Source of the DNA: Ostrea edulis
Lineage: Eukaryota
Direction of reading: 5' to 3'
Length of the DNA: 64,000 nucleotides
Assembly: GCF_947568905.1 (NCBI RefSeq)
Contig: NC_079164.1
Span: forward strand, 21,142,001-21,206,000
Below are positions 9,804 to 64,000 of this stretch, piece after piece (the first letter of the stretch is position 1; the number at the start of each line of letters is the position of its first letter). The notes beneath the pieces are model-generated. The model was not told the DNA's origin, made no database searches, and saw only the letters and a program-made list of their open reading frames with translations. A program made the position numbers and the translations under genes.

Positions 9804-12800
9804 GTCCAAACTTGCATTTTTGCAAAATAGAATAGTAATCTATCTATTAACGTGATGTAATAATAGACAGAGTTTTTATTTCGTATGGAGTGCTTTTCTT
9901 TGGCTTCAGCTTTCGGTTTAGTACAATGTGTTATGAAACATTTCTCCGGCAGTCTATCAGCTCAATCTTGACTGAAAATCAAATATTGCTGCCATGAAAA
10001 TGGACGAGCCTGTCAGCTGTGGACTCAACATTTCATAAACATGTAAATGCATTGTCCTGGTTACAATACCTTAAATCCTTCCCTTAAGCTATATATATAT
10101 ATATAATTTCCTCTTCTTATTTATACAAATGCAAATGCTTGATTGTGTTTAAGGATTGGTGTATTGTAACGCCACGTTTGACGATCTTCAGTGCTGGAAC
10201 TACACTCTTGCTGGTACCACTGCCTTCGGGGCCTGTCCCAAAGAACATAAATATTCTTACCTGTTCACAAATCCAAAAGGTATGACCATACTGATAAGTT
10301 ATCGTTGAATTGTTTATTACTTACATGAGTTTGACCCACATTCTCGGTGACACCCTCCCCTTTATTTGTGTATGCAAAACGATATCCTGTAAATGTGTGG
10401 TTCTTCAATTTCCAGTGACATTTAGCGCTTCAGTGATACAGACGTTCATTGATTTAGATATGTGGAAAACGAACGATAGTAAATAGATGCTCTAGACATG
10501 GAATTTACGCATTTACATTATTTTACATTATCTTATTTACGGTAATAGCAAACCTCCTGGGTCAGCGAAAACAGTTCGTTATAACCAAACTTCATTACAT
10601 GTGTACTCCAATAAAATGTTCGTTGTTTTCCTTTCATAGAGAAATAAACATCACTTTGCAATAGTGTAAATTCGTTTTAAAAGTGTTCGTTACAAGCGTG
10701 TAATACTGTATTTTAGTTTTGTAATCAGAATAAGAGGGGCGGATCATTAGGAGTGTGGATCCAAACGTTATCTGCGTGTTACACAAATGCATACATTGGA
10801 TACATAGACATTAGTACATTATAACATATAGGTCATTCATACTTGTATAGCAATATAGAATGTTGTGTACGAATTTGTATTTCTTAAGACTTCTAATCTA
10901 ACAAGCCAACACGGTGATGCATGGTGATGATGATTTGAGGTGATGATGATTTTAGGTGTTGATGATTTTAGTTTATGATGATTTAACATGTAGGTGTTGA
11001 TGATTTTAGGTGTTGATGATCTTAGGTGATGATGATCTTAGGTAATGATGATTTTAGGCGATGATGATTTTAGTTTATAATGATTTAACATGTAGGTGTT
11101 GATGATTTTAGGTGTTGATGATCTTAGGTGATGATGATCTTAGGTAATGATGATTTTAGGCGATGATGATTTTAGTTTATGATGATTTTAGGTGATGATG
11201 ATTTTAAATGATGATGATCTTAGGTGATGATGATTTTAGGTGTTGATGATTTTAGTTTATGATGATTTAACATGTAGGTGTTGATGATTTTAGGTGATGA
11301 TGATTTGAGGTGATGATGGTGTTAGGTGATGATGATTTTAGGTGATGATAATTTTAAGTGATGATGATCTTAGGTGATGATGATTTTAGGTGATGATGGT
11401 TTTAGGTGTTGATGATTTTATTTTATGATGATTTAACATGTAGGTGTTGATGATTTTAGGTGATGATGATCTTAGGTGATGATAATTTTAGGTGATGATG
11501 ATTTAACATGTAGGTGTTGATGATTTTAGGTGATGATGATCTTAGGTGATGATGGTTTTAGTTGATGATGATTTTAGGTGATGATGATTTAACATGTAGG
11601 TGTTGATGATTTTAAGTGATGATGATCTTAGGTGATGATGGTTTTAGTTGATGATTTTAGTTGATGGTGATTTTAGTTTATAATGATTTAACATGTAGGT
11701 GTTGATGATTTTAGTTTATTATGATTTAACATGAAGGTGTTGATGGTTTTAGGTGATGATGATCTTAGGTGATGATGATTTTAGGTGATGATGATTTTAG
11801 GTGATGGTGATTTGAGGTGATGATGATTTTAGGTGATGATGATTTTAGGTGATGATGATTTTAGGTGATAGTGATTTTAGGTGATAGTGATTTTAGGTGA
11901 TGATGATTTTAGGTGATGATGATATTAGGTGATGATGGTTTTAGGTTTCTCTAAACGGAAGTGTTCTGCGTCGGGTAGATGGGTACGGAAGAACTACACG
12001 AAAGAATTCCTGATCACAGATTACAGTCCTTGTGGTTCGCTACCCTTGGATGAAAACAACAAACAAGAGGTAATGTGTCGGGGTGCAATCCGCTCATGTG
12101 CTAAGTACCACGTACAGGGTAAACAAAGTCAATGGAACCTACGTTATATATATATCAGATTGAGGGGGGGGGGGGGTAATGCTAAATGTAATGGGAATGT
12201 TTAGAAATCAAAGCAACGCTAGTAATGTATAACCTTCCCCAGAAAGGTAGTGTATGTGATTGGTAATTTAATGCACTACTTCTAGAAATGTACTATAAGC
12301 TAACAATATGTGGCATTACATAACATACAAACAGACATGGAAATAATTTTAGCCTTCCTAATGATATTATCAGACTTGAAATATTTACATTTTATTTTTT
12401 GATAGGTATAAATTTTGAAAAATGAATAAAATGTATTAAACAATTACGCTTTTATCTATCAACCCTTTTAGGCTCCTTTATTTTCAAAAAATTCTTCATA
12501 ATAAAAACAATATGTTATGTCAGGTATCTGGAATCATTTAGGATTCAGCTGTTCTACCTTAGCAATTATAATATATACTACTCAAAATTTGATAAGGATC
12601 ACTAGGTTATATGTGTGTAATTTACCACTAACATAACAAAAGAGATAAATTTGACTCAGAAACGTGTTTACTCAGGTTATGAATGAAAATTCATGAACGG
12701 CATGGACTTTTATCAATACGGAATGCTTGAAATATGATAACAACACCAAAAGGCATTTCATTACAAAAAGTTAACAGCAGACCAGAGAAAGAATTACACA

Positions 12801-15800
12801 GTTTTTGGGGATAGTCCATCATTACACTTAGTCGATGAAGTGTCAATACCGGGTATGGCCTCCCCTTGCATCAATCACGGCTTGACAACGTCGAGCCATG
12901 CTGTCAATAAGCACCCGGATGTTTCCAATGGGAAGGTTGTTCCACTCTTCCACGAGGGCGTTTCCGAGCTCTGCGAAAGTCGTGGGTTGTGCTCTACGGC
13001 GTGAAAGGGCAACCTGCAGCATGTTCCATACATGCTAAATCGGGTTCAAGTCCGGCGAGCGCGCTGGCCAGTCCATACGGACAATTGTCTCCTGCTGAAG
13101 GTACTGCTCCACCACCCTAGCGCGATGAGGACGGGCGTTATCATCCATCAGGATGAACTCAGGGCCAACAGCACCAGCGTAGGGTCTGACGTAAATATCG
13201 AGGATCTCATCCCGGTACCGCACCCCCGTCATTGTTCCTCTCTCCGGGACATGAAGATCTGTTCTTCCATCCCTGCTGATTCCACCCCAGACCATGGTGG
13301 AACCACCACCATAACGGTCATGTTGATGTTGGCATCATGGAAACGTTCACGTTCACGTTGTCGTCGCCACACTCGGTGCCTCCTGTCTGTAAAGTCCAAA
13401 CAATACCTGGACTCCTCGGTGAACAGAACTTGAACCCAATCGTTCTGTGTCCAAGTGACATGATCTTCAGCCCAGTCCAATCGCTCCCGCCGGTGTCGAA
13501 CAGTCAGAGGGACTCGAACACATGTCCTTCTCGAGTTGAGACCTGCATTGTGAAGCCGATTCCGTATCGTCTGAGTGGACACATTCACCCCGTGGCGTTC
13601 AGGAGGTCGTTACGTAGGCTGGTTGCTGTCCAGAAGGGATGGCGTCGTGCCTGAAGAGCCACAAAATGGTCTTGGCGTTGGGTTGTCGACCTCTGACGAC
13701 CACCCCGATGTCGGTGTGCTGCTGTACCAAAAGTTTGCTGTCGGTTCCAGGCCCTGTTTACAACGCTCTGGCTGACGTTTAGTGCATTTGCAACGTCACG
13801 TTGTGAATATCCAGCGTCAAGCATTCCAATACATCTGCCCTGTTGTTCTGTCGTCAGGCGACGCCTTACACGTTGAGGGGGCATTGTGTTGATAAATGTA
13901 GTGTAAACACTCAAGTGAGTTTGAAATTTTAGAAAGAATCAGACACCAATGCCTGAGTGAAAATCGTGCAATGGTAACAAATGCATAAACTGTGATGAGA
14001 AACGCATTTCCCATGGCATGAAATGCACGTGCAAGTTTGTTGAAGACGTTTTTGATCTCACTTGGACACAATATTGCCAGTTATGCAGTTATTAATTTTT
14101 TAAACAGAAAAATATCTATGATCCTATCAAATTTTGAGTAGTATATACCAAGTGCAAATATCTCAAACAATATTCCACAACAGTAACATACAACACAACA
14201 CCAGTAACATACAACACAACATCAGTAACATACAACACAACACCAGTAACATACAACACAACATCAGTAACATACAACACAACACAACACCAGTAACATA
14301 CAACACAACACCAGTAACATACAACACAACATCAGTAACATACAACACCACACAACACCAGTAACATACAACACAACACCAGTAACATACAACACAACAT
14401 CAGTAACATACAACACAACACAACACCAGTAACATACAACACAACACCAGTAACATACAACACAACACCAGTAACACACAACACAACACCAGTAACATAC
14501 AACACAACATCAGTAACATACAACACAACACCAGTAACAGACAACACAACACCAGTAACATACAACACAACACAACACCAGTAACATACAACACAACACC
14601 AGTAACACACAACACAACACCAGTAACACACAACACAACACCAGTAACATACAACACAACACAACACCAGTAACATACAACACAACACCAATAACATACA
14701 ACACAACATCAGTAACACACAACACAACATCAGTAACACACAACACAACACCAGTAACACACAACACAACACCAGTAACATACAACACAACACAACACCA
14801 GTAACATACAACACAACACCAATAACATACAACACAACACCAGTAACACACAACACAACACCAGTAACACACAACACCAGTAACACACAACACAACATCA
14901 GTAACATACAACACAACAGTAGTAACACACAACACAACATCAGTAACACACAACACAACACCAGTAACACACAACACAACACCAGTAACATACAACACAA
15001 CACAACAGTAGTAACATACAACACAACACCAGTAACATACAACACAACAGTAGTAACACACAACACAACATCAGTAACACACAACACAACACCAGTAACA
15101 CACAACACAACACCAGTAACATACAACACAACACAACACCAGTAACATACAACACAACACCAATAACATACAACACAACACCAGTAACACACAACACAAC
15201 ATCAGTAACACACAACACCAGTAACATACAACACAACACAACACCAGTAACATACAACACAACACCAGTAACATACAACACAACACCAATAACATACAAC
15301 ACAACATCAGTAACATACAACACAACACCAGTAACATACAACACAACAGTAGTAACATACAACACTACACCAGTAACATACAACACAACATCAGTAACAC
15401 ACAACACAACACCAGTAACACACAACACAACACCAGTAACACACAACACAACACCAGTAACATACAACACAACATCAGTAACACACAACACAACACCAGT
15501 AACGTACAACACAACACCAGTAACATACAACACAACATCAGTAACATACAACACAACACAACACCAGTAACATACAACACAACATCAGTAACACACAACA
15601 CAACACCAGTAACATACAACACAACACCAGTAACATACAACACAACACCAGTAACATACAACACAACACCAGTAACATACAACACAACACCAGTAACATA
15701 CAACACCAGTAACATACAACACAACACCAGTAACACACAACACAACACCAGTAACATACAACACCAGTAACACACAACACAACACCAGTAACATACTACA

Positions 15801-18800
15801 CAACACCAGTAACATACAACACAACACCAGTAACATACAACACCAGTAACACACAACACAACACCAGTAACACACAACACAACACCAGTAACATACAACA
15901 CAACACCAGTAACATACTACACAACACCAGTAACATACAACACAACACCAGTAACATACAACACCAGTAACACACAACACAACACCAGTAACATACAACA
16001 CAACAGTAGTAACATACAACACAACACCAGTAACATACAACACAACACAACACCAGTAACATACAACACAACATCAGTAACACACAACACAACACCAGTA
16101 ACATACAACACCACACAACACCAGTAACATACAACACAACACCAGTAACATACAACACAACAGTAGTAACATACAACACTACACAACACCAGTAACATAC
16201 AACACAACACCAGTAACATACAACACAACACCAGTAACACACAACACCAGTAACATACAACACAACACCAGTAACATACAACACAACAGTAGTGTGGTTG
16301 AGTCCGTGTTTGGTTGCTCTGACGTACATCTTCTCAAACATTTAGAAATGAGTTATCCCTGAGAATGAAATACTTTATGTATTTTTGTTTGTATTTTAAT
16401 AGATCCTTAATTACCAAATACTGATAAACATTTACGTAAGCGGCTGTGTGACATCAGTATTTCTCCTGATAGTGGCTATAGTAGTGTTTAAACTATTTAG
16501 GTAAGAGAAACTGCTTATAAGTAATTTGATTTTACATATTTCCCGAAATGATTATGATTATGAATGTTGATGTAGCTATACAATATTACAGGCAACTTAG
16601 ATGTCCACGTGTAACTATTCATCTCAACCTGTTTATTTCCTACATTCTGAGTAATATTAGTTGGACCATCATGTTCATCAATTCTGGTGAGCCGGTAAGA
16701 TCCCAATGTCTTCTTTGTTTAATTTTGGTGTTCATTGTAAGATCGATCTAAGATAAATAGATTAAGCGATCCCTGTCTAAGTAAGGAGAGAAACTTTTTT
16801 GATATGAATATCATTTCTTACAACGTATCACCATTCAATCAGTAACTACGGTAATAAAATTACAGAAAAACCTTGTTTTATTTAAAGGATACAGAAAACG
16901 CTGATATCAAAATTAATTGAATGAATACATGTTAAGGTAAAAAAAAAAGGAATATAAAAACTTGATGCACATGACTATCTTTACAGCTGTGGTGTTACGT
17001 GCTGAACATTTTGGCCACGTTTACCTTGTTCAGTAATTATAGCTGGATGTGGGGGGAGGGCTGTTTCCTCTTTTTGTCTCTTGTGAACGTGTATTCCGAC
17101 AAAGAAAAGCTCCTCAAGATGTGCTGCTGTTTCGGTTGGAGTAAGTCCTACTGGGTTTTTTTTAATGTTATACGACTGTAAACGTTGAGTTCTTCAAATA
17201 TAGTGAAGTACTGTCACTTCACCAGGACCACCACATCCAAAAACAACCTATGGAGTCTATACATGTGTGGAAAATTATCCAGAGGTAAAACAACATGCAA
17301 AAAAAAATACTATCAACAGCAAAATACCAAAAACAACAACAACAACAACAACACCGCCACCATAACCACCAACATCATTACCACATACAAAACCACACTA
17401 TCACCACCACCAAACCACCATCAATAGCAACAACATTACCACATACAAAACCACACTATGACCACCACCAAAACACCATCAATAGCAACAACATTACCAC
17501 ATACAAAACCACACTATGACCACCACCAAACACCATCAATAGCAACAACATTACCACATACAAAACCACACTATCACCACCACCAAAACATCATCAATAG
17601 CAACAACATTACCACATACAAAACCACACTATCACCACCACCAAAACACCATCAATAGCAACAACATTACCACATACAAAATCACATTATGACCACCACC
17701 AAAACACCATCAATAGCAACAACATAACCACATACAAAACCACACTATCACCACCACCAAAACACCATCAATAGCAACAACATTACCACATACAAAATCA
17801 CATTATGACCACCACCAAAACACAATCAATAGCAACAACATTACCACATACAAACCACACTATGACCACCACCAAACACCATCAATAGCAACAACATTAC
17901 CACATACAAAACCACACTATCACCACCACCAAAACACCATCAATAGCAACAACATTGCCATCAATTGCCTCCAACATTCTTACTATAACGACCAACAATA
18001 ACACCCTCACTATCAACAGCAACAACACCAGCAACAATAAAAATATCGACAACATTATCAACATCATCACCTCATCTTTCACCAACACCATCTACAACAT
18101 TGCCACAATTACTACATCATTTTCATCAATATTACTATTAACAGGAAAACCACCATTACTACCAGCATCATTACCACTGACACCAAAAACAACACATTCA
18201 CCATTACTACCAACATCATCACCACCACCAACACTAAAAACAACACAGTCACCATTACTGCCAACATCATCACCACCAACACTAAAACAACACAGCCACC
18301 ATTACTGCCAACATCATCACCACCAACACTAAAACAACACAGCTACCATTACTACCAACATCATCACCACCAATAACACTAAAAACAACACAGCCACCAT
18401 TACTACCAACATCATCACCACCACCAACACTAAAACAACACAGACACCATTACTGCCAACATCATCACCACCAATAACACTAAAACAACACAGTCACCAT
18501 TACTGCCAACATCATCACCACCAATAACACTAAAACAACACAGTCACCATTACTGCCAACATCATCACCACCAATAACACTAAAACAAGACAGCCACCAT
18601 TACTACCAACATCATCACCACCAATAACACTAAAACAACACAGCCACCAATACTATCAACATCATCACCACCAACAACACTAAAACAACACAGCCATTAC
18701 TACCAACATCATCACCACCACCAACACTAAAAACAACACAGTCACCATTACTACAAACATCATCACCACCACCAACACTAAAAACAACACAGCCATTACT

Positions 18801-20295
18801 ACCAACATCATCACCACCAATAACACTAAAAACAACACAGACACCATTACTGCCAACATCATCACCACCAATAACACTAAAACAACACAGTCACCATTAC
18901 TGCCAACATCATCACCACCAATAACACTAAAACAAGACAGCCACCATTACTACCAACATCATCACCACCAATAACACTAAAACAACACAGCCACCAATAC
19001 TACCAACATCATCACCACCACCAACACTAAAACAACACAGCCATTACTACCAACATCATCACCACCACCAACACTAAAAACAACACAGCCATTACTACCA
19101 ACATCATCACCACCACCAACACTAAAAACGACACAGCCACCATTACTACCAACATCATCACCACCACCAACACTAAAACCAACACAGTCACCATTACTAC
19201 AAACATCATCACCACCACCAACACTAAAAACAACACAGCCATTACTACCAACATCATCACCACCAATAACACTAAAAACAACACAGTCACCATTACTGCC
19301 AACATCATCACCACCAATAACACTAAAAACAACACAGCCACCATTACTACCAACATCATCACCACCACCAACACTAAAACAACACAGTCACCATTAATAC
19401 CAACATCATCACCACCACCAACACTAAAAACAACACAACCATTACTACCAACATCATCACCACCACCAACACTAAAAACAACACAGTCACCATTACTACC
19501 AACATCATCACCACCAATAACACTAAAACAACACACCCACCATTACTACAAACATCATCACCACCACCAACACTAAAACAACACAGCCACCATTACTACC
19601 AACATCATCACCACCAATAACACTAAAACAACACAGCCACCATTACTACAAACATCATCACCACCACCAACACTAAAACAACACAGCCACCATTACTACA
19701 AACATCATCACCACCACCAACACTAAAACAACACAGCCACCATTACTACAAACATCATCACCACCACCAACACTAAAACAACACAGCCACCATTACTACA
19801 AACATCATCACCACCACCAACACTAAAACAACACAGTCACCATTAATACCAACATCATCACCACCACCAACACTAAAAACAACACAGCCACCATTACTAC
19901 CAACATCATCACCACCACCAACACTAAAACAACACAGCTACCATTACTACAAACATCATCACCACCACCAACACTAAAAACAACACAGACACCATTACTG
20001 CCAACATCATCACCACCACCAACACTAAAACCAACACAGTCACCATTACTGCCAACATCATCACCACCAATAACACTAAAAACAACACAGCCACCATTAC
20101 TACCAACATCATCACCACCACCAACACTAAAACAACACAGCCACCATTACTACAAACATTACCATCACCAATAACAACACCTCAACCGATTACCACAATA
20201 TCATCATCACCACTACCAATAACAACCGTCAACAGCAACAACACCGCCACTATAAGCACTAACAATGTTAACACCATCAGCAATAACAACATTAC

Positions 20296-20330
<35 letters not shown>

Positions 20331-21690
20331 CCACCACCAATAAAGAGAACAACACCACAATCTTACCACTACCACCACCACCAAAAATAACACCGCAACC
20401 ATTAACACCACCACCACCAAAAACAACACTGCAGTCATTATCTCCTCCATCAAGAAAAACACTGCAACCATTACCACCACCACCAAGAAAAACACTACAA
20501 CCATTACCACCACCACCACCAAGAACAACACCATAACCATGAACACAAACACCAAAAACAACAACGCAACCATTAACACCCCACCACCACCAAAAATATC
20601 ACTGCAACCATTAACACCACCACCACCACCAAGAACAATACCGCAACCATTAACACCACCACCACCACCAAGAACAACACCGCAACCATTAACACCACCA
20701 CCACCACCAAGAACAATACCGCAACCATTAACACCACCACCACCACCAAGAACAACACCGCAACCATTAACACCCCACCACCACCAAAAACATCATTGCA
20801 ACCATCACCATCAATAGCATCATTATCACCACCACCACCACCACGAACAACATCAGAACAACATCCTTATTAACAATTGTGCATGGAAACTATCGTTAAC
20901 AAATTGAAATAATGGCAAATTTTCACTGATTTTATTGCAGTTTTTCCTGTCGTTGTGATGGTCGTCTATATTGCCGCTAGAATCACGATAGGAGAAAAAC
21001 CAGGAGAGGTGTAAGTAGAATACATTACATTCCCCCCACTACTGAATGGTTATATGTTATCCCAGATAAGTATCATAAGATACACACAAATTCATTAGTT
21101 GTATTAAAACTTTAATGCAATACTAGCTGTCATTTTGGTGTCGAATTTTTTGTTGCAAAAATGTGATTTACTATTTCAATGACAGAAAAAATAAGGTTTA
21201 TAAACTTTTGTTATTAATATTTGTGTTAGAAAACCTATCCAGTGGCTCTGAATGAAGCACAATTGCATTACTGGCTTCCCGTACAGCAATTGATTTCTAA
21301 ATAATGCTATATATTCAATTGAACCGAGATCTTTATTTTGATAAAATCTTAAACTTATTTTTAATTTTATCAATGACTATGGTTAAAGTTACATACAAAA
21401 CTATCATAATAGCACATATTTACAACAAAATAAAAAATTTGATTTAGACCTGATATTACTTTAAAAATGCAAAAATATACATACTAACACTTACGGACCC
21501 CTGACAACGGGAAGATGCAGCGAAATATCAATACGCAATACTACAAACCCTTAAATTTCAGAAATGTATAAATGATCTTGACTCTGGGGAGACGTAGAAA
21601 ACTGTCACAAATGTTTGGCGAAGGTTTAATTCACAAACCGACTGTGATGCAATAATTGACTTTGTGAAAAAGAAAGAGTAATGTTAGAGA

Positions 21691-21724
<34 letters not shown>

Positions 21725-24700
21725 GAGGAGACGAGTAAAGCGTAGAAGTCTTTACAATGTCTAAGAGAGAAACACATTATCTTGGTTACTTATAGACCCA
21801 AGTGTTTATAGAATGCTCCGTCCCATATTGTGTGAAAAAGTGGTTTTAGAGATCGTATCGATATGCATCACGTGTCCCCACTAATCTAATATCTGGTATC
21901 TGAATCGTTCACATTCTGAGGGTCACATTTATGGGGACGTTAATGTGATGACAGAATTTTTGTACCTGCGCCGCTAATCATCGCGACGTAGGGTAAGTAC
22001 TTCTTCGATAACAACATCGTCATTATATAAGCATGGCATAGATGCTACATAAATTACCAATACTATGACACAATCTTCAAACAAAGAGCCCATTGTATGG
22101 CTGTAAAAGCTACGTAAAGTGAGTTGCTACATTTACTTGTAGATGCTGGCAGACACAGGACTGGACAACCTGGATCTATCTTATCCCTATAGCACTTCTA
22201 TTATTGGTAGGTAATATTCATAGACAATCTGGATATGGTTTGTCCTTATTGCACTTCTATTATCGGTAAGTCATGTTGAACTGCTAGCAGAGTGCAAAAC
22301 GTAATTTACGGACAAATAACTGAAATTTATGTGTAGTAGATTTAAATGGGAATTATCACTCATGGTAAATGTACATAACTCACGGTTTTTTCATTAATCA
22401 TTAATATAATACAGAGCATCAACTTTGATGGTAAACAATTGGGAATTGATGTCATTAAGTTCCCGGGGCGAAGTTGTGAGGTTTTGTTAATTACTCGTAC
22501 AACTCGGTGTAAGCCATGTCAGTTCCCTCAACCTCAAGTCCATAAACTGATAAGAGCCTCAAGTCAAAATTTTGATCTTAAAAATTATCTAGTATTCGAG
22601 ATGTTTAAAGAAACCGCTAGTTTGTGGGGGGAAAATTAAATGCAAACGTATACTGAATTTTTTTTCATGAAAATTATTTCAAAAGTTATTTTAATTCGAA
22701 ATTTAGACTTAAAAATATAAGGAATCAAAATTTAGACTTAATTAAGTCTATTATCAGTTTACGGTCTTGGAGCGTAGTTTTAAAGGTTTTGCGTAAAGGG
22801 TTTTTATATATACAAAACGCATCACTACTTGTTACTGTTCTGACGATTATTGTAGTATTGTGAAATATATTTCTCTTTAATATACATGTCTATATTAATT
22901 CAATATTGTTAACTCTCTTGTTCTTGACTTTATGACAACATGTATTGATTCAGTAAAATGAATTTATCTGAAATAGTTCCTAATTATAACTCTCAACGAC
23001 CAGTCACTGCAAATATATACAGATTTATATTTACACTAGAATATGGGGCAGTCGTGTGCACTTATACGATGAAATGACGATGACCCAATCACATCTCGCA
23101 CTGACGTCACAATTTTTTTCATTTACAGATCAACATTGTGTTTTTAATCCATATCATTCGGATTCTTGCATCCAAACTGAGATCAACCAGAAATGAACAC
23201 TTCAGTCACTACCGGTTAGTTATGTATGAGAGAGTGGAAAGAGAACGATTTACTGATTACTCATGCCAAGTAAACTTCATTTTCGCGCGGCACACTATTC
23301 ACAGGTTACACTATTTCGCGGACTTCGTAATGTAAGCATCTCAGGATGCATCGTACTGTCAGGGCATCAATGAGTAGAGAGACGAAATTCGCGAAATCAT
23401 GCAACTAGCTGTGGGTATCCGATGAAATGCACAAATATACTACTGTAAACTGTTCGCGAGGATTTTCCTGTTAGGAGAAGTTATCCGCAAACTTACCCCC
23501 CCCCCCCCCCCCCCCCCCCCCCGCGCGGAAATAAAGTTCACCACACTGGTGTTTTCTGAATCTCTGAGATTGATGACGTCACAATACGATAAACGCATTT
23601 GTGGAGATCGATCGACTGGGGCCACGTGTACTTTGATATAAACATGTTTCATGAATAACAAGAATCAGCGTGACATTGAAATCGTCATGCATTTATTACC
23701 AAAATGATGTACTTTAAACAATGAAAATTTTATGTACAGCTGCAATACAAAATTTGCTACTGACATCCGCGAAGCAACGGAAAACAGTAAAAGGCATAGC
23801 AATATGTATACTGAGTATGTCAAGCTAATTGAACCGTTTCAATATTATTCAATGATATAATTGATATCGTGTTTTATGGTATCCAACACAAAATATTAGA
23901 ACTTTTCACATTGTGGACGAATGACACATTGGTAAATCAATTGTACATTTTATACTGATAGTTCATATCATTTTACTTGATACAAAATGTTAGAGAGGGT
24001 TTGGTGCAATTTATGGCAGCCGCAATTTATACGTGACCCAAAGTTACAATATTATGACATATTACATTCGAGGTTTTTTTTTTCTCACGACTTGACGGAT
24101 ATCTACACTCTCTAGTTGAAAACGTTCACAAAAGTACCCTCCTCTGTCATACATTTTTGGAGGAAATCGTACTACATTATTATGTAACTACAATGTATCG
24201 TGAATTGCAACTCTCTTCTTTGATTTTTTTTTTTTTTTCGAGAGCCGCTATTTTGTCATTGCTGCACTGTCAACATTTAGCTTAGAATTATTTTATGCAT
24301 CTTTTCATAAACAGCATTGTCTTACACTTTGTTTCATATGCCAAAAACACGTATTTCCTACAGGATTCAATCTAAAAAATCAATAAGGCATTATTTTCAA
24401 AGTATTTGTTTATTTTTCAACAATCTCTCCAAAATTACCTTCTATGTTAATGCCTTTTAATTTAAAATCAATATAGTATTTAATATCTAATTTCCTTTGA
24501 TAAAAATCCCCCTTTTTTGACTAATTATGTGTCGAATACCATAAATTAGAATTCACACGTTGTTTTTACTCAGAGACACCCGTACACACAATGTGTTCGT
24601 TACTATATTTTCGTCAACAGGAAGACAGCTCGGGCCGTACTTTTGCTGGTCCCGTTGCTCGGGATTCATTTCGTCCTCATGGTGTACAGTTTTCCATACT

Positions 24701-60994: not shown

Positions 60995-61000
60995 CAATAT

Positions 61001-61034
<34 letters not shown>

Positions 61035-61035
61035 T

Positions 61036-61075
<40 letters not shown>

Positions 61076-63746
61076 TAGGCTGAGGTCAACAGATCCGTTC
61101 GAGGGTCAAACAAAACAGCTGTTGTCCGAGGACCCAGTCTATAACTGTTTTGTTATACACCTTAATTTTTAGGCTGTTTTACTAACACATGGTTTGTTGA
61201 TTGTGTACGTTTATCAACGTATCCACTAGTGTAAAAGAAAACATGCCCAATATCATTACCGAAGTATGAAAGATCGGAAGATATAAATAAATCAATTAAC
61301 GTTTATTATTCATGAATTTTCACAATACATATGTAAATATAACAACAAGGTCCACGTGAACAGAAACTACAGAAGCTCATTCTATTCTGGGGTTGAAATT
61401 TCAGGGTGTGTTTGTAATCATTAGCTTTTTAACTTTTAGTTTTTTCCACCATAGTCATTAATAACGACTGAACAGTTATTAAAACTGTATTTTGGACAAA
61501 CATTTTCTTTCGAAACGCACGTGATTTGGTTATTGACGGTGCTAGGCTCAGGAATGTTAGACTGTGCAACGGTTGAATTCTGTTCAAGCACAGAAACCAT
61601 CATATTGTTTAATTCCTGACTATCTATTTCTAGAAAGTCAACATTTTCTAAATTCGCATTATCAGAGCTTGTAGCAGTGATCACTTCTGGAGCTGGTGCT
61701 GTCTGTGGGATTACTTGTTCTGCCAATGCGTTAGACATTTCGCGTTTCTTTTTCTCCCGTGCTTTTGAGACGTAATGTTTTAAACTTGTTTCCGATTTAT
61801 GTTTTGAGACAGTCATAATATGCCTCCCTTCATACCCACTTTCATCCAGAAGAGTTATGCAGGTAGCCCTAATGCAGTGATTACTGTACACTTTAGAAAG
61901 ATCTGCTTGTTTACTTATATTCTGCATCATTTGGCCGAGGGAGTTCTTGCCCAGAACCATGTTGTCATACCAAATCGATGGATCCTCACTTTCAGCTTGA
62001 AAACTCTTGGGCCGTTGCCATAAGAAATGACAACCTGGATTTAATTTCGTCAGGTATTTCTCGAAGCTTAGAACAGGGCAGTGTGGGGTTCCTAGAATAA
62101 AATTAAACTAAAATCAGTTTTTTAAAAAATACTTCTCTACAATTATTAAGTTCATAAATTAAAATAAGATTAAGACAAGACAGAAAACTTTCTGAATGAT
62201 ATAACTATCTAGAACACACAAAGCAAAATGAAATTGATATTGGTTTCAAGTGTGCAACAAGTGAAATATACATGCCACGATATATATCTGGAAAAATGTT
62301 GTTAATCTCTATTTTATGGAATAGACAGGCTGACGTCAATCGCCTGTGAAATGTGTTGAAATGGCCCTAAGTATAACACTGATTCATATAAATTTTTACT
62401 AGTTTCTTACCTGGTTTTTCGTACATCCTACCGCCACCATCATCCACATCATCTGTTCCACCCTGGTGATTTTTAGTGAGCCTTGGTTTCACGTTTACAA
62501 CATATCTCCTCCCACTAGCACCAGTGTTTACTACAAAATCTTCTTTGGTCATATTGCGAAGGTTTTCCCTTCCGCGGTTACACAAAAACATCATCAGTTC
62601 AAAAAACACCTTAAATTGCAGAGATTTAGGGTCTTTAGTCGATAAAGTATCGGTGGAATACAATTTTCTTATATCTTCCTCGGAAATAATTTCCTTATGT
62701 TTGCTTTCACCACCCCCTTCCATTTTCAGCTTTTTCAAACAAGCATGAAAAATTTTGTTGGCCTCCTTGAATCTGTCGTCATTTACAATGTCAAATTTGT
62801 GCGTTTTTTCAAATGTTTTCTGTAAACCGTACCTGAGAGAAATCATTGTTTTCTTAGCATAAGGCTCTCCATTGCGATTTCTGACGTTACAATAAAATTT
62901 CTTCAGAACAAGAGCCAATTCTTCGGCAGGTATATCTTGTATATCATCATAATTCCGTTGAAGCATTTCGTTGATATATTGTTCAAAAATATTTTTCGCA
63001 ACGTTGATAACATTTTTCGTATTCCTGCTTTCCGTTTGATCTAATAGAGTCTGTATCTCATCATCACTAAAATTAGTAAACCTCGCCATTACGTAAAAAC
63101 AGCAGACTGATAATCACGTGACTTGCGTAGCCAATAGAAATAGAGCAGACAATTGCCCGGTCAACAGTTCGAAAACTATTGACCGGTCAATAGACCACGA
63201 GTGTGAAAGTTGATTTAACAGTTGAAATGTTCGTTTTAGATTGTATTAGTTTTATATAGGGAAAAAATTAAGGTGTATAACAAAACAAATTGTTATACAA
63301 CTTCATTTCTTTTTCTATATAAAACTAATACGATTTAGAACCAACATTTTAACTGTTAAATCAACTCTCACACTCGTGGTCTATTGACCGGTCAACAGTT
63401 TACGAACTGTTGACCGGGCAATAGTCTGCCTTATTTCCATTGGCTACGCAAGTCACGTGATTCTCGGTCTGCTGCTTTGTTTACACAATGGCGAGGTCCA
63501 GTGATTTAACTGATAATGAAATACAGAATTTATTAGATGAAACGCTAGGCAGGAATATGAAAAATGTAATGATTGATTATTAATTTGGATATTGGGTATG
63601 TTTTCTTTTAAACTAGGGAATACGTTGATAAACGTACGCAATTACACTGTCTTGTTAAAAGTTTGAAGTCAACAAACCATGTACAACCTTTAAAAAATGA
63701 AGGTGTATAACAAAACAGTTATCGACTGTGTCCTCGGACAACAGCT

Positions 63747-63786
<40 letters not shown>

Positions 63787-63828
63787 ACGGCTTCGGGCAA
63801 CAGATCCCTTCTCGGGTCAAACAAAACA

Positions 63829-63861
<33 letters not shown>

Positions 63862-63868
63862 GATATTG
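60995..63868. mobile_element. Crypton-type (tyrosine recombinase) composite element with ~260 bp inverted ends
   Basis: 60995-~61255 is the reverse complement of ~63585-63868; contains an intact YR gene, an internal palindrome centred at ~63287, and self-palindromic ~140 bp terminal modules. Confidence 0.88.
61436..63089 (-). CDS. Crypton tyrosine recombinase (DUF3504/CryptonA-like), 444 aa, 2 exons, apparently intact
   Basis: Exon 1 63089-62411 (MARFTNF..LKKFYCNVR..GEPYAKKTM..LRYGL..CNRGRENLR..TKNHQGG..KP G|GTAAG); exon 2 62091-61436 (TTCTAG|GTPHCPV..WQRP..WYDNMVLGKN..YSNHCIRAT..IMTVSKHKS..LKHY). Catalytic R, K, HxxR, H and Y are all present; 1335 nt in frame. Confidence 0.9.
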
Positions 63869-64000
63869 CATCCCAAAGAATTAACTCCCTCATACTGTTA
63901 ATTATAAGTCAATAAAACAAAATATTGCATCCCAAAGAATAAACTCCCTCATACTATTAATTTTATATGTAGGTCAATAAAACAAAATATTGCATCCCAA
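63862..64000. repeat. Tandem duplication, ~60-66 bp unit starting ATATTGCATCCCAAAGAAT, abutting the Crypton right end
   Basis: Unit starts seen at ~63863, ~63922 and ~63987. Confidence 0.85.

What the first reader, a model, noticed from the sequence alone, without database searches (positions are those of the whole stretch)
60995..63868. Modular Crypton composite: four modules joined at tyrosine-recombinase-like core sites
Seen order: palindromic module P (61007-61145), YR unit (61152-63283, bounded by TTGTTATACACCTT / AAGGTGTATAACAA), an inverted ~420 bp deletion derivative (63290-63711) with the same termini, and module P in reverse (63718-63856). The P-unit junctions read TATAAC-[6 bp AAAACA or its complement]-GTTAT (61140-61157, 63706-63722). 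The centre is a 14 bp arm - 6 bp spacer - 14 bp arm palindrome (63270-63303) containing the same TATAACAAAACA. Both outer ends read CAATAT-[T/C]ATACA-GTTATT. Known: YRs act on inverted binding arms with 6-8 bp spacers (dif, loxP), and Cryptons use a YR and are usually described with short termini. Inference: the recombinase stacks autonomous, non-autonomous and hairpin units into an integron-like array at its own sites. The inverted sites could also allow inversion switching, or resolution into hairpin-ended or circular forms.
Basis: partly seen in the sequence, partly recalled or inferred. Interest (0 to 1): 0.8.

Follow-up and report, generated by a model that had tools for sequence, protein, structure and literature searches.

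The report
Two oyster Cryptons sharing one target
The 2.9-kb "four-module composite" is two tyrosine-recombinase (Crypton-A type) transposons, one coding and one short derivative, inserted back to back on either side of the 6-bp centre of a single palindromic target, which shows what DNA site this little-studied recombinase recognises.

Summary
In detail: every repeat, junction and the two-exon 444-codon gene lie at the stated coordinates.

The four-module, integron-like reading is only partly right. Genome-wide there are two mobile units, not four:
- an autonomous element of about 2.28 kb (61001-63283);
- a non-autonomous deletion derivative of about 575 bp (63290-63862, inverted).

Each unit has a ~145-nt hairpin-forming palindrome P at one end. 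The rest is a body bounded by 21-bp inverted repeats that ends in ...GTGTATAACAA. P was never found as a free unit.

- **Target:** flanks of 43 P ends and 29 T ends give a degenerate palindrome, AAYAN-N6-NTRTT, with no duplication.
- **Paired ends:** the T end (AACAA) is itself a perfect half-site. All six inverted T-T pairs found have exactly 6 bp between them.
- **This locus:** left flank CAATAT, centre AACAAA and right flank ATATTG rebuild one continuous site. Neighbouring tandem-repeat units carry that site uninterrupted.

This is a Crypton-A family with undescribed termini and a recombinase-type core site read from genomic footprints. An earlier finding of this scan (s1-279197) already noted the terminal hairpin on other DNA of this genome. 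Function is inferred, not tested.

The parts
60995..61000 (+). Left half-site of the original target (CAATAT; fits RAYAN)
   Evidence: Flank logo of 43 P ends. Together with 63284-63289 and 63863-63868 it rebuilds the uninterrupted sequence seen in the tandem-repeat units to the right.
61001..63283 (+). Autonomous Crypton-A-type element (P end to T end). Its gene is on the minus strand.
   Evidence: Copies at 98-99% identity end at exactly these limits (L002, L003, L004, L006).
61004..61148 (.). Palindrome P of the autonomous element. Outer end is TATACAGTTATTGAC, inner end GTCTATAACTGT.
   Evidence: 71-nt arms at 86%. DNA hairpin -64.5 kcal/mol, z = -15.9. P stems are among the best conserved parts of the family.
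61150..61170 (+). Inner inverted repeat T' of the body (TTGTTATACACCTTAATTTTT), joined to P as AACAA-AACAG-TTATA
   Evidence: Perfect inverted repeat with 63263-63283. The junction column block is 97% conserved in 20 short copies.
61436..62091 (-). Exon 2, with the catalytic HxxR...H...Y region and the stop codon
   Evidence: Pfam Phage_integrase E = 2.8e-4 and DUF3504 E = 2e-3. Weak PDB integrase alignment that lines up HxxR and H. Atlas clusters with Phage_integrase/DUF3504.
62092..62410 (-). Intron (GT...AG) of the recombinase gene model
   Evidence: Donor CAG|GTAAGA and acceptor TCTAG|G read. Exons sum to 1335 nt, which is 444 codons plus stop. No RNA evidence was obtained.
62411..63089 (-). 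Exon 1: N-terminal domain, plus a candidate first catalytic Arg in NRGRENL
   Evidence: Pfam QRICH1 domain E = 4.5e-8, above the curated cut-off.
63263..63283 (+). T end of the autonomous element (…AAGGTGTATAACAA). Its last 5 nt, AACAA, equal the preferred target half-site.
63284..63289 (.). N6 core (AACAAA) of the original target, kept between the two T ends
   Evidence: Identical to the 6 bp before ATATTGCATCCC at the junctions of the tandem repeat to the right. All six T-T pairs found have 6 bp here.
63290..63862 (-). Non-autonomous ~575-bp derivative, inverted: T end 63290-63303, T' 63700-63713, P 63715-63859
   Evidence: More than 30 copies of this unit match query 2295-2867/2873 at 86-95%. 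It keeps the 5' ~280 bp and 3' ~125 bp of the autonomous element.
63863..63868 (+). Right half-site of the original target (ATATTG; fits NTRTT) and first bases of a 59-65-bp tandem repeat
   Evidence: TRTT lies at +8 of 11 of 29 single T ends, against a mean of 0.66 at other offsets. TRF array.

Best explanation
Two independent elements of one Crypton-A-type family occupy a single palindromic target, CAATAT-AACAAA-ATATTG.

**The elements.** Each element is [~145-nt palindrome P][body bounded by 21-bp inverted repeats T'...T] and ends in ...GTGTATAACAA.

**Insertion.** It adds no target duplication. It happens at the left edge of the central 6 bp of a degenerate palindrome, AAYAN|N6-NTRTT. The result is flank-AAYAN + TATACAG...element...AACAA + N6-NTRTT-flank.

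**Why pairs form.** After a first insertion, the element's own AACAA plus N6 plus NTRTT makes a better site than the original. A second element entering upside down lands on the other side of the same N6. That gives T-6 bp-T.

**Order at this locus.** The older short derivative (about 90% identical to its kin) probably came first. The young coding copy (98-99% identical to its kin) came second.

**Shown:** the element limits, the flank preferences, the 6-bp rule, the lack of duplication, and the rebuilt target.

**Inferred:**
- two recombinase subunits bind the inverted half-sites, with strand exchange at the 6-bp core;
- a circular donor in which T abuts P;
- P and the AACAG motifs serve as accessory cis sites.
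For: - **Two units, not four.** Copies match P + body or derivative + P only.
- **P-end flanks.** 43 P ends read R-A-Y-A-N-(T)|ATACAG.
- **T-end flanks.** 29 single T ends read AACAA|T-N5-N-T-A-T-T. TRTT sits at +8 in 11 of 29, against a mean of 0.66 and a maximum of 3 at 53 other offsets. Loose-end consensus from four read sets agrees.
- **The 6-bp rule.** An exact-pattern scan with free spacing 0-30 found 5 element-derived inverted T-T sites, all at 6 bp. The 2-, 12- and 19-bp hits show no other features of the family; the 2- and 19-bp ones are a short hairpin and a 22-bp tandem repeat. A sixth, diverged pair also has 6 bp. The six spacers all differ, so the events are independent.
- **No P-P junctions**.
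- **No duplication.** L003 sits in a 30-bp tandem repeat with no base gained or lost.
- **Rebuilt target.** At this locus flank + centre + flank gives TCAATAT-AACAAA-ATATTGCATCCC. Neighbouring repeat units read TCAATAA-AACAAA-ATATTGCATCCC.
- **Protein.** QRICH1, DUF3504 and Phage_integrase hits, with an HxxR...H...Y alignment.
- **Literature parallel.** The active CryptonF-1_cRei ends in CACCG and targets CAYCG (PMC9977147).
Against: - No empty allele, circle junction or long read spanning this locus could be examined. Only short-read contigs were available.
- The P-side half-site fits NTRTT only with a 7-bp spacing, not 6, so the site geometry in the donor is unsettled.
- The 6 bp next to the P end are always the element's own (TATACA) and those next to the T end are always the target's. 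A plain two-strand exchange across unlike cores would give both kinds.
- The flank sample (about 30-45 ends) is modest and was partly chosen by exact 14-mers.
- The first catalytic Arg is assigned by motif only.
- The gene model has no RNA support.
Confidence: 0.78

Rival explanations
1. Four separable modules (hairpin P, recombinase unit, deletion derivative, P) are stacked by the recombinase into an integron-like array at TATAAC-N6-GTTAT sites.
For: - The P/body junction is a conserved inverted-arm site, 97% conserved.
- Three T ends are followed directly by P or part of P alone (L033, L034, L024).
- One diverged copy has a T' end without P (L008).
Against: - P is attached to a body in essentially every copy.
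- The one P with two outer-type ends in the genome directly abuts another element's T end.
- There are no P-P junctions.
- Copies of the two larger units end exactly at P and T, never at the P/body junction.
- No arrays longer than pairs were seen.
Confidence: 0.07
2. The T-6 bp-T junction was made by recombinase-mediated inversion or exchange between the ends of two elements already present elsewhere, not by a second insertion.
For: - Crypton-mediated inversions between inverted copies are documented in Chlamydomonas (PMC9977147).
- Exchange between two T-N6 sites would also give exactly 6 bp.
Against: At this locus both outer flanks and the centre together rebuild one continuous sequence that also occurs uninterrupted in the neighbouring repeat units. 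An inversion would join unrelated flanks.
Confidence: 0.06
3. An ordinary fixed 2.9-kb element with long terminal inverted repeats, or an assembly fold-back artefact.
For: The block has 176-nt inverted ends at 96%. Short-read contigs cannot span it.
Against: - No second genomic copy has the 2.9-kb structure.
- The two halves differ in length (2283 versus 573 bp), and their shared parts are only 80-91% alike. A fold-back artefact gives identical arms.
- The same junction type recurs at five other loci with different spacers.
Confidence: 0.03

Closest known systems
Animal Crypton-A elements and their non-autonomous derivatives (Kojima & Jurka 2011, PMC3212892)
   Same: - A single tyrosine-recombinase gene of DUF3504 type, with no other enzyme.
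- Far more short internal-deletion derivatives than coding copies.
- No target-site duplication.
   Different: That paper found no terminal repeats, direct or inverted, in animal Cryptons. This family has a ~145-nt terminal palindrome, 21-bp inverted repeats around the body, and a defined palindromic target.
Goodwin model of Crypton insertion, as observed in active CryptonF-1_cRei of Chlamydomonas (PMC9977147)
   Same: One terminus ends in a short motif (there CACCG, here AACAA) that resembles the target motif found beside the other terminus (there CAYCG, here AAYAN).
   Different: Here a second, inverted half-site (NTRTT) lies 6 bp away. Element ends are themselves reused as half-sites, giving T-6 bp-T pairs and head-to-tail junctions.
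Core sites of bacterial and yeast tyrosine recombinases (loxP, FRT, dif): inverted arms around a 6-8-bp spacer
   Same: Both the target and the T-T junction have two inverted arms and a 6-bp centre.
   Different: - The arms are only about 5 informative bases.
- The central 6 bp need not match between donor and target.
- Cleavage points are unknown.
Folded-DNA recombination sites (integron attC, CTX phage attP)
   Same: A long hairpin-forming palindrome lies beside the crossover point. The junctions look like the product of exchanging one strand only.
   Different: There is no evidence here for single-stranded intermediates. This is a resemblance, not a membership.

Membership tests
Crypton (tyrosine-recombinase DNA transposon) | Encodes a tyrosine recombinase with the R-H-R-Y catalytic residues | tested here: inconclusive
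   Exon 2 hits Pfam Phage_integrase at E = 2.8e-4, below the curated cut-off, matching profile positions 108-170/172. A PDB integrase (3nkh, E = 0.41) aligns HxxR and the second H, and places Tyr one residue off. The first Arg (NRGRENL, exon 1) is assigned by motif only. The joined protein was not searched.
Crypton (tyrosine-recombinase DNA transposon) | No reverse transcriptase or other transposase, which separates it from DIRS/Ngaro | tested here: met
   The 2.28-kb unit holds only the two-exon 444-codon gene. Pfam found no other enzyme domain.
Crypton (tyrosine-recombinase DNA transposon) | Short motif at one terminus resembling the target motif at the other flank, with no target-site duplication | tested here: met
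   The T end is AACAA and the P-end flank is RAYAN. Insertions into tandem repeats (L003 and this locus) show no gain or loss of bases.
Crypton-A / DUF3504 lineage | Recombinase related to DUF3504 proteins (KCTD1, ZMYM, QRICH1) | tested here: met
   QRICH1 domain PF25561 at E = 4.5e-8, above the cut-off. DUF3504 PF12012 at E = 2e-3. The nearest Atlas clusters carry Phage_integrase and DUF3504 and come from molluscs and cnidarians. No tree was built.
   P and body do not occur apart. Only pairs of whole elements were seen.
Fixed long-TIR or foldback transposon | The whole 2.9-kb structure recurs as one unit | tested here: not met
   Only the window itself matches query 1-2874.

The most novel reading that the evidence does not exclude
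The terminal palindrome P is not just a binding platform. It is a folded (hairpin or cruciform) recombination substrate. In a circular donor, T-P-T' forms a ~196-nt near-perfect palindrome whose only bulge lies at the crossover point.

Insertion would then exchange one strand only and be completed by replication, as at integron attC or CTX-phage sites.

This would explain three things:
- the P-side junction always carries the element's 6 bp and the T-side junction the target's;
- Cryptons gain copies although they also excise (PMC9977147);
- some T ends are followed by a P fragment that stops at the hairpin tip, or by a snap-back-like symmetric P (L033, L034).
Probability: 0.15. Interest if true: 0.85.

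Novelty: new variant of a known kind. Interest (0 to 1): 0.5.

Why it matters
Cryptons are the least understood class of eukaryotic DNA transposons. No Crypton recombinase has been studied biochemically, and animal Cryptons are described as having no recognisable ends.

This oyster family gives:
- exact ends;
- conserved cis elements (a terminal hairpin, inverted repeats, AACAG motifs);
- a target with two inverted half-sites and a 6-bp core;
- natural double-occupancy products.

Together these define testable substrates for the 444-residue enzyme. They also explain why such elements nest and pair, which matters for annotating bivalve genomes, where Crypton-A insertions are among the most polymorphic (bioRxiv 10.64898/2026.02.10.705023).

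Tried and rejected
1. **Read check.** Only short-read contigs were served. They break in the repeats, so they neither confirm nor deny the central junction, and no empty allele was visible in the rows shown.
4. **Counting head-to-tail T>P junctions by pattern**. The count is contaminated by an unrelated family that starts TATAATAATATACAATTATTG and by ordinary insertions into AACAA-like targets. Only L033, L034 and L024 are kept. L038 is ambiguous.
5. **PDB sequence search with exon 1** found nothing.
6. **Joined protein.** The joined 444-residue sequence was not searched, folded or placed on a tree. The large protein searches were not used, because the family scans left the protein's identity clear enough.
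The flank logos and T-T pairs fit AACAA-N6-TTGTT better. With that register the internal junction has a 5-bp spacing and the presumed donor junction a 7-bp spacing.

Full report
**1. Observation**

- a 176-nt inverted repeat at the two ends of the block (60995-61170 / 63693-63868, 96%);
- a palindrome P (61004-61148, repeated inverted at 63715-63859);
- a body bounded by TTGTTATACACCTT and AAGGTGTATAACAA;
- an inverted partial copy (63290-63711);
- a central 14-6-14 palindrome (63270-63303).

P folds as a DNA hairpin at -64.5 kcal/mol, z = -15.9.

The gene is a two-exon model on the minus strand: 63089..62411 and 62091..61436, donor CAG|GTAAGA, 444 codons. I searched it exon by exon, by reference. 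The joined protein was not searched or folded.
- Exon 1 matches the QRICH1 domain above Pfam's cut-off.
- Exon 2 matches Phage_integrase and DUF3504 weakly.
- A PDB integrase aligns HxxR and H, with Tyr one residue off.
- The nearest Atlas clusters are mollusc and cnidarian Phage_integrase/DUF3504 proteins.

This is the Crypton-A type of Kojima & Jurka 2011 (PMC3212892). The genome is an oyster of about 895 Mb.

**2. Two units, not four**

A DNA search of the whole genome with the 2874-bp block found no second copy of the block. Instead it found:
- copies matching positions 1-2289 only, that is P + body: L002, L003, L004 and L006 at 98-99%, and L005 at 91%;
- more than 30 copies matching 2295-2867/2873 only, that is derivative + P, about 575 bp, at 86-95%.

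So the mobile units are 61001-63283 (autonomous) and 63290-63862 (non-autonomous, inverted here). P is one end of each.

Evidence that P is not a free unit:
- A scan for P with two outer-type ends found one case in the genome, and it directly follows another element's T end.
- P-P junctions: none.

Word depth in four read sets, relative to the unique flank, suggests a few hundred P and short-unit copies and about ten coding bodies (rough only).

Of the full-length copies fetched, the window copy and one other keep both exons open.

**3. Ends and target**

Across de-duplicated ends in the fetched loci, the P end is (T)ATACAGTTATTGAC preceded by R-A-Y-A-N. The T end is GTGTATAACAA followed by T-N5-N-T-A-T-T. 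TRTT sits at +8 in 11 of 29 single T ends, against a mean of 0.66 and a maximum of 3 at 53 other offsets. The loose-end consensus of short-read contigs gives the same pattern independently.

The target is therefore a degenerate palindrome, AAYAN-N6-NTRTT. The element enters at the left edge of N6. Its own last five bases, AACAA, are a perfect left half-site. This matches the Goodwin model as seen in active Chlamydomonas Cryptons, which end in CACCG and target CAYCG (PMC9977147). What is added here is a second inverted half-site 6 bp away.

Insertion adds and removes nothing. L003 lies in a 30-bp tandem repeat whose register is unbroken across the element.

**4. The 6-bp rule and this locus**

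A pattern scan for inverted T ends with any spacing from 0 to 30 gave eight sites. The five that belong to the family all have exactly 6 bp. The 2-, 12- and 19-bp sites show no other features of the family: the 2-bp one is a short hairpin, the 19-bp one lies in a 22-bp tandem repeat, and the 12-bp one has no element features at all. A sixth, diverged pair also has 6 bp. The six spacers all differ. In the pairs that could be mapped, the partners are whole or nearly whole elements.

At this locus the right flank is a 59-65-bp tandem repeat whose unit junctions read GTCAATAA-AACAAA-ATATTGCATCCC. The block reads ...GGCTCAATAT | autonomous element | AACAAA | derivative (inverted) | ATATTGCATCCC.... 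Flank, centre and flank therefore rebuild one site, with 18 of 19 core bases identical and the same length. The base just outside ATACAG (T at 61001, C on the element strand at 63862) belongs to the elements.

So the two elements sit on either side of the N6 of one palindromic target. This explains why both outer flanks read CAATAT. The short copy is about 90% identical to its kin and the coding copy 98-99%, so the short one was probably first.

**5. What is inferred**

Two recombinase subunits binding the inverted half-sites, with exchange at the 6-bp core, is the standard architecture of this enzyme class. It fits the data but is not tested.

Two things do not fit a simple two-strand exchange:
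- The 6 bp beside P are always the element's own and those beside T are always the target's.
- The P-side half-site fits only at 7-bp spacing.

Three T ends are followed, with zero spacing, by P or part of it alone:
- L033: the outer arm, up to the hairpin tip, then exactly the target's N6;
- L034: a symmetric whole P;
- L024: 97 bp.

These cases show that donors or tandems exist in which T abuts P as AACAA|TATACAG. They are otherwise unexplained.

Conservation across 20 short copies is highest in the P stems, the P/T' junction, the T end and a TTGACCGGTCAA palindrome. AACAG is the most enriched 5-mer, with 10 sites against 1.2 expected. A hypothetical circle junction would fold into a ~196-nt hairpin with its only bulge at the crossover.

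**6. Known or new**

Crypton-A elements are annotated in oyster genomes and are among the most polymorphic insertions in an estuarine oyster. Non-autonomous Cryptons are also known. The papers I could search state that animal Cryptons lack terminal repeats. None describes a terminal hairpin, a two-half-site target or paired occupancy. Repbase and Dfam could not be checked.

An earlier follow-up of this scan (s1-279197) already reported on other DNA of this genome that this lineage ends in a 140-160-nt hairpin. I confirm that and add the target model.

**7. Artefact check**

The two halves differ in length and are only 80-91% alike where they overlap. The junction type recurs at five other loci. 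A fold-back assembly error is therefore unlikely, though raw long reads were not available.

**Verdict**

This is a new structural variant of a known transposon class, with a clear and testable site model.

Noticed in passing
window 63863-64000 (continues to L001 4369-4552): A three-unit tandem repeat of 59-65 bp starts exactly at the right edge of the block. Its unit junctions served as the uninterrupted version of the target site.
   Followed up: yes
window about 63421-63440; L009 around 1049, 1500 and 2900; L050 around 2662: An internal site of the element itself (GGCAATAG|TCTGCC|TTATT) fits the target consensus. Other copies of the family have inserted into it at least three times, giving nested elements.
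   Followed up: partly
L033 3032-4771 and L034 3171-4000: A second non-autonomous subfamily of about 810 bp has the same P and T' but a different T-end region (…GGGGTATAACAA). It carries five AACAGT repeats near the T end.
   Followed up: partly
L051-L058 (position 1500 in each): An unrelated repeat family begins TATAATAATATACAATTATTGCTGTTTTTGAGG. Its first bases resemble the P-end motif ATACA(A/G)TTATTG, but it has no BLAST similarity to the Crypton units. It may be another element using a similar end.
   Followed up: partly
L034 2956-3111: This is the only P in the genome with two outer-type ends. It is an almost perfectly symmetric palindrome placed directly after another element's T end, and it looks like a snap-back copy.
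   Followed up: partly
window 10001-22000: The composition profile shows extreme strand skews here: GC skew +0.41 at 10-12 kb, then down to -0.87 at 14-22 kb. This probably reflects long low-complexity or satellite tracts.
   Followed up: no
window 63152-63193 and 63381-63424: There is a conserved pair of TTGACCGGTCAA palindromes just upstream of the recombinase start codon, plus a CACGTG box at 63112-63127. They could be promoter elements or accessory binding sites.
   Followed up: no
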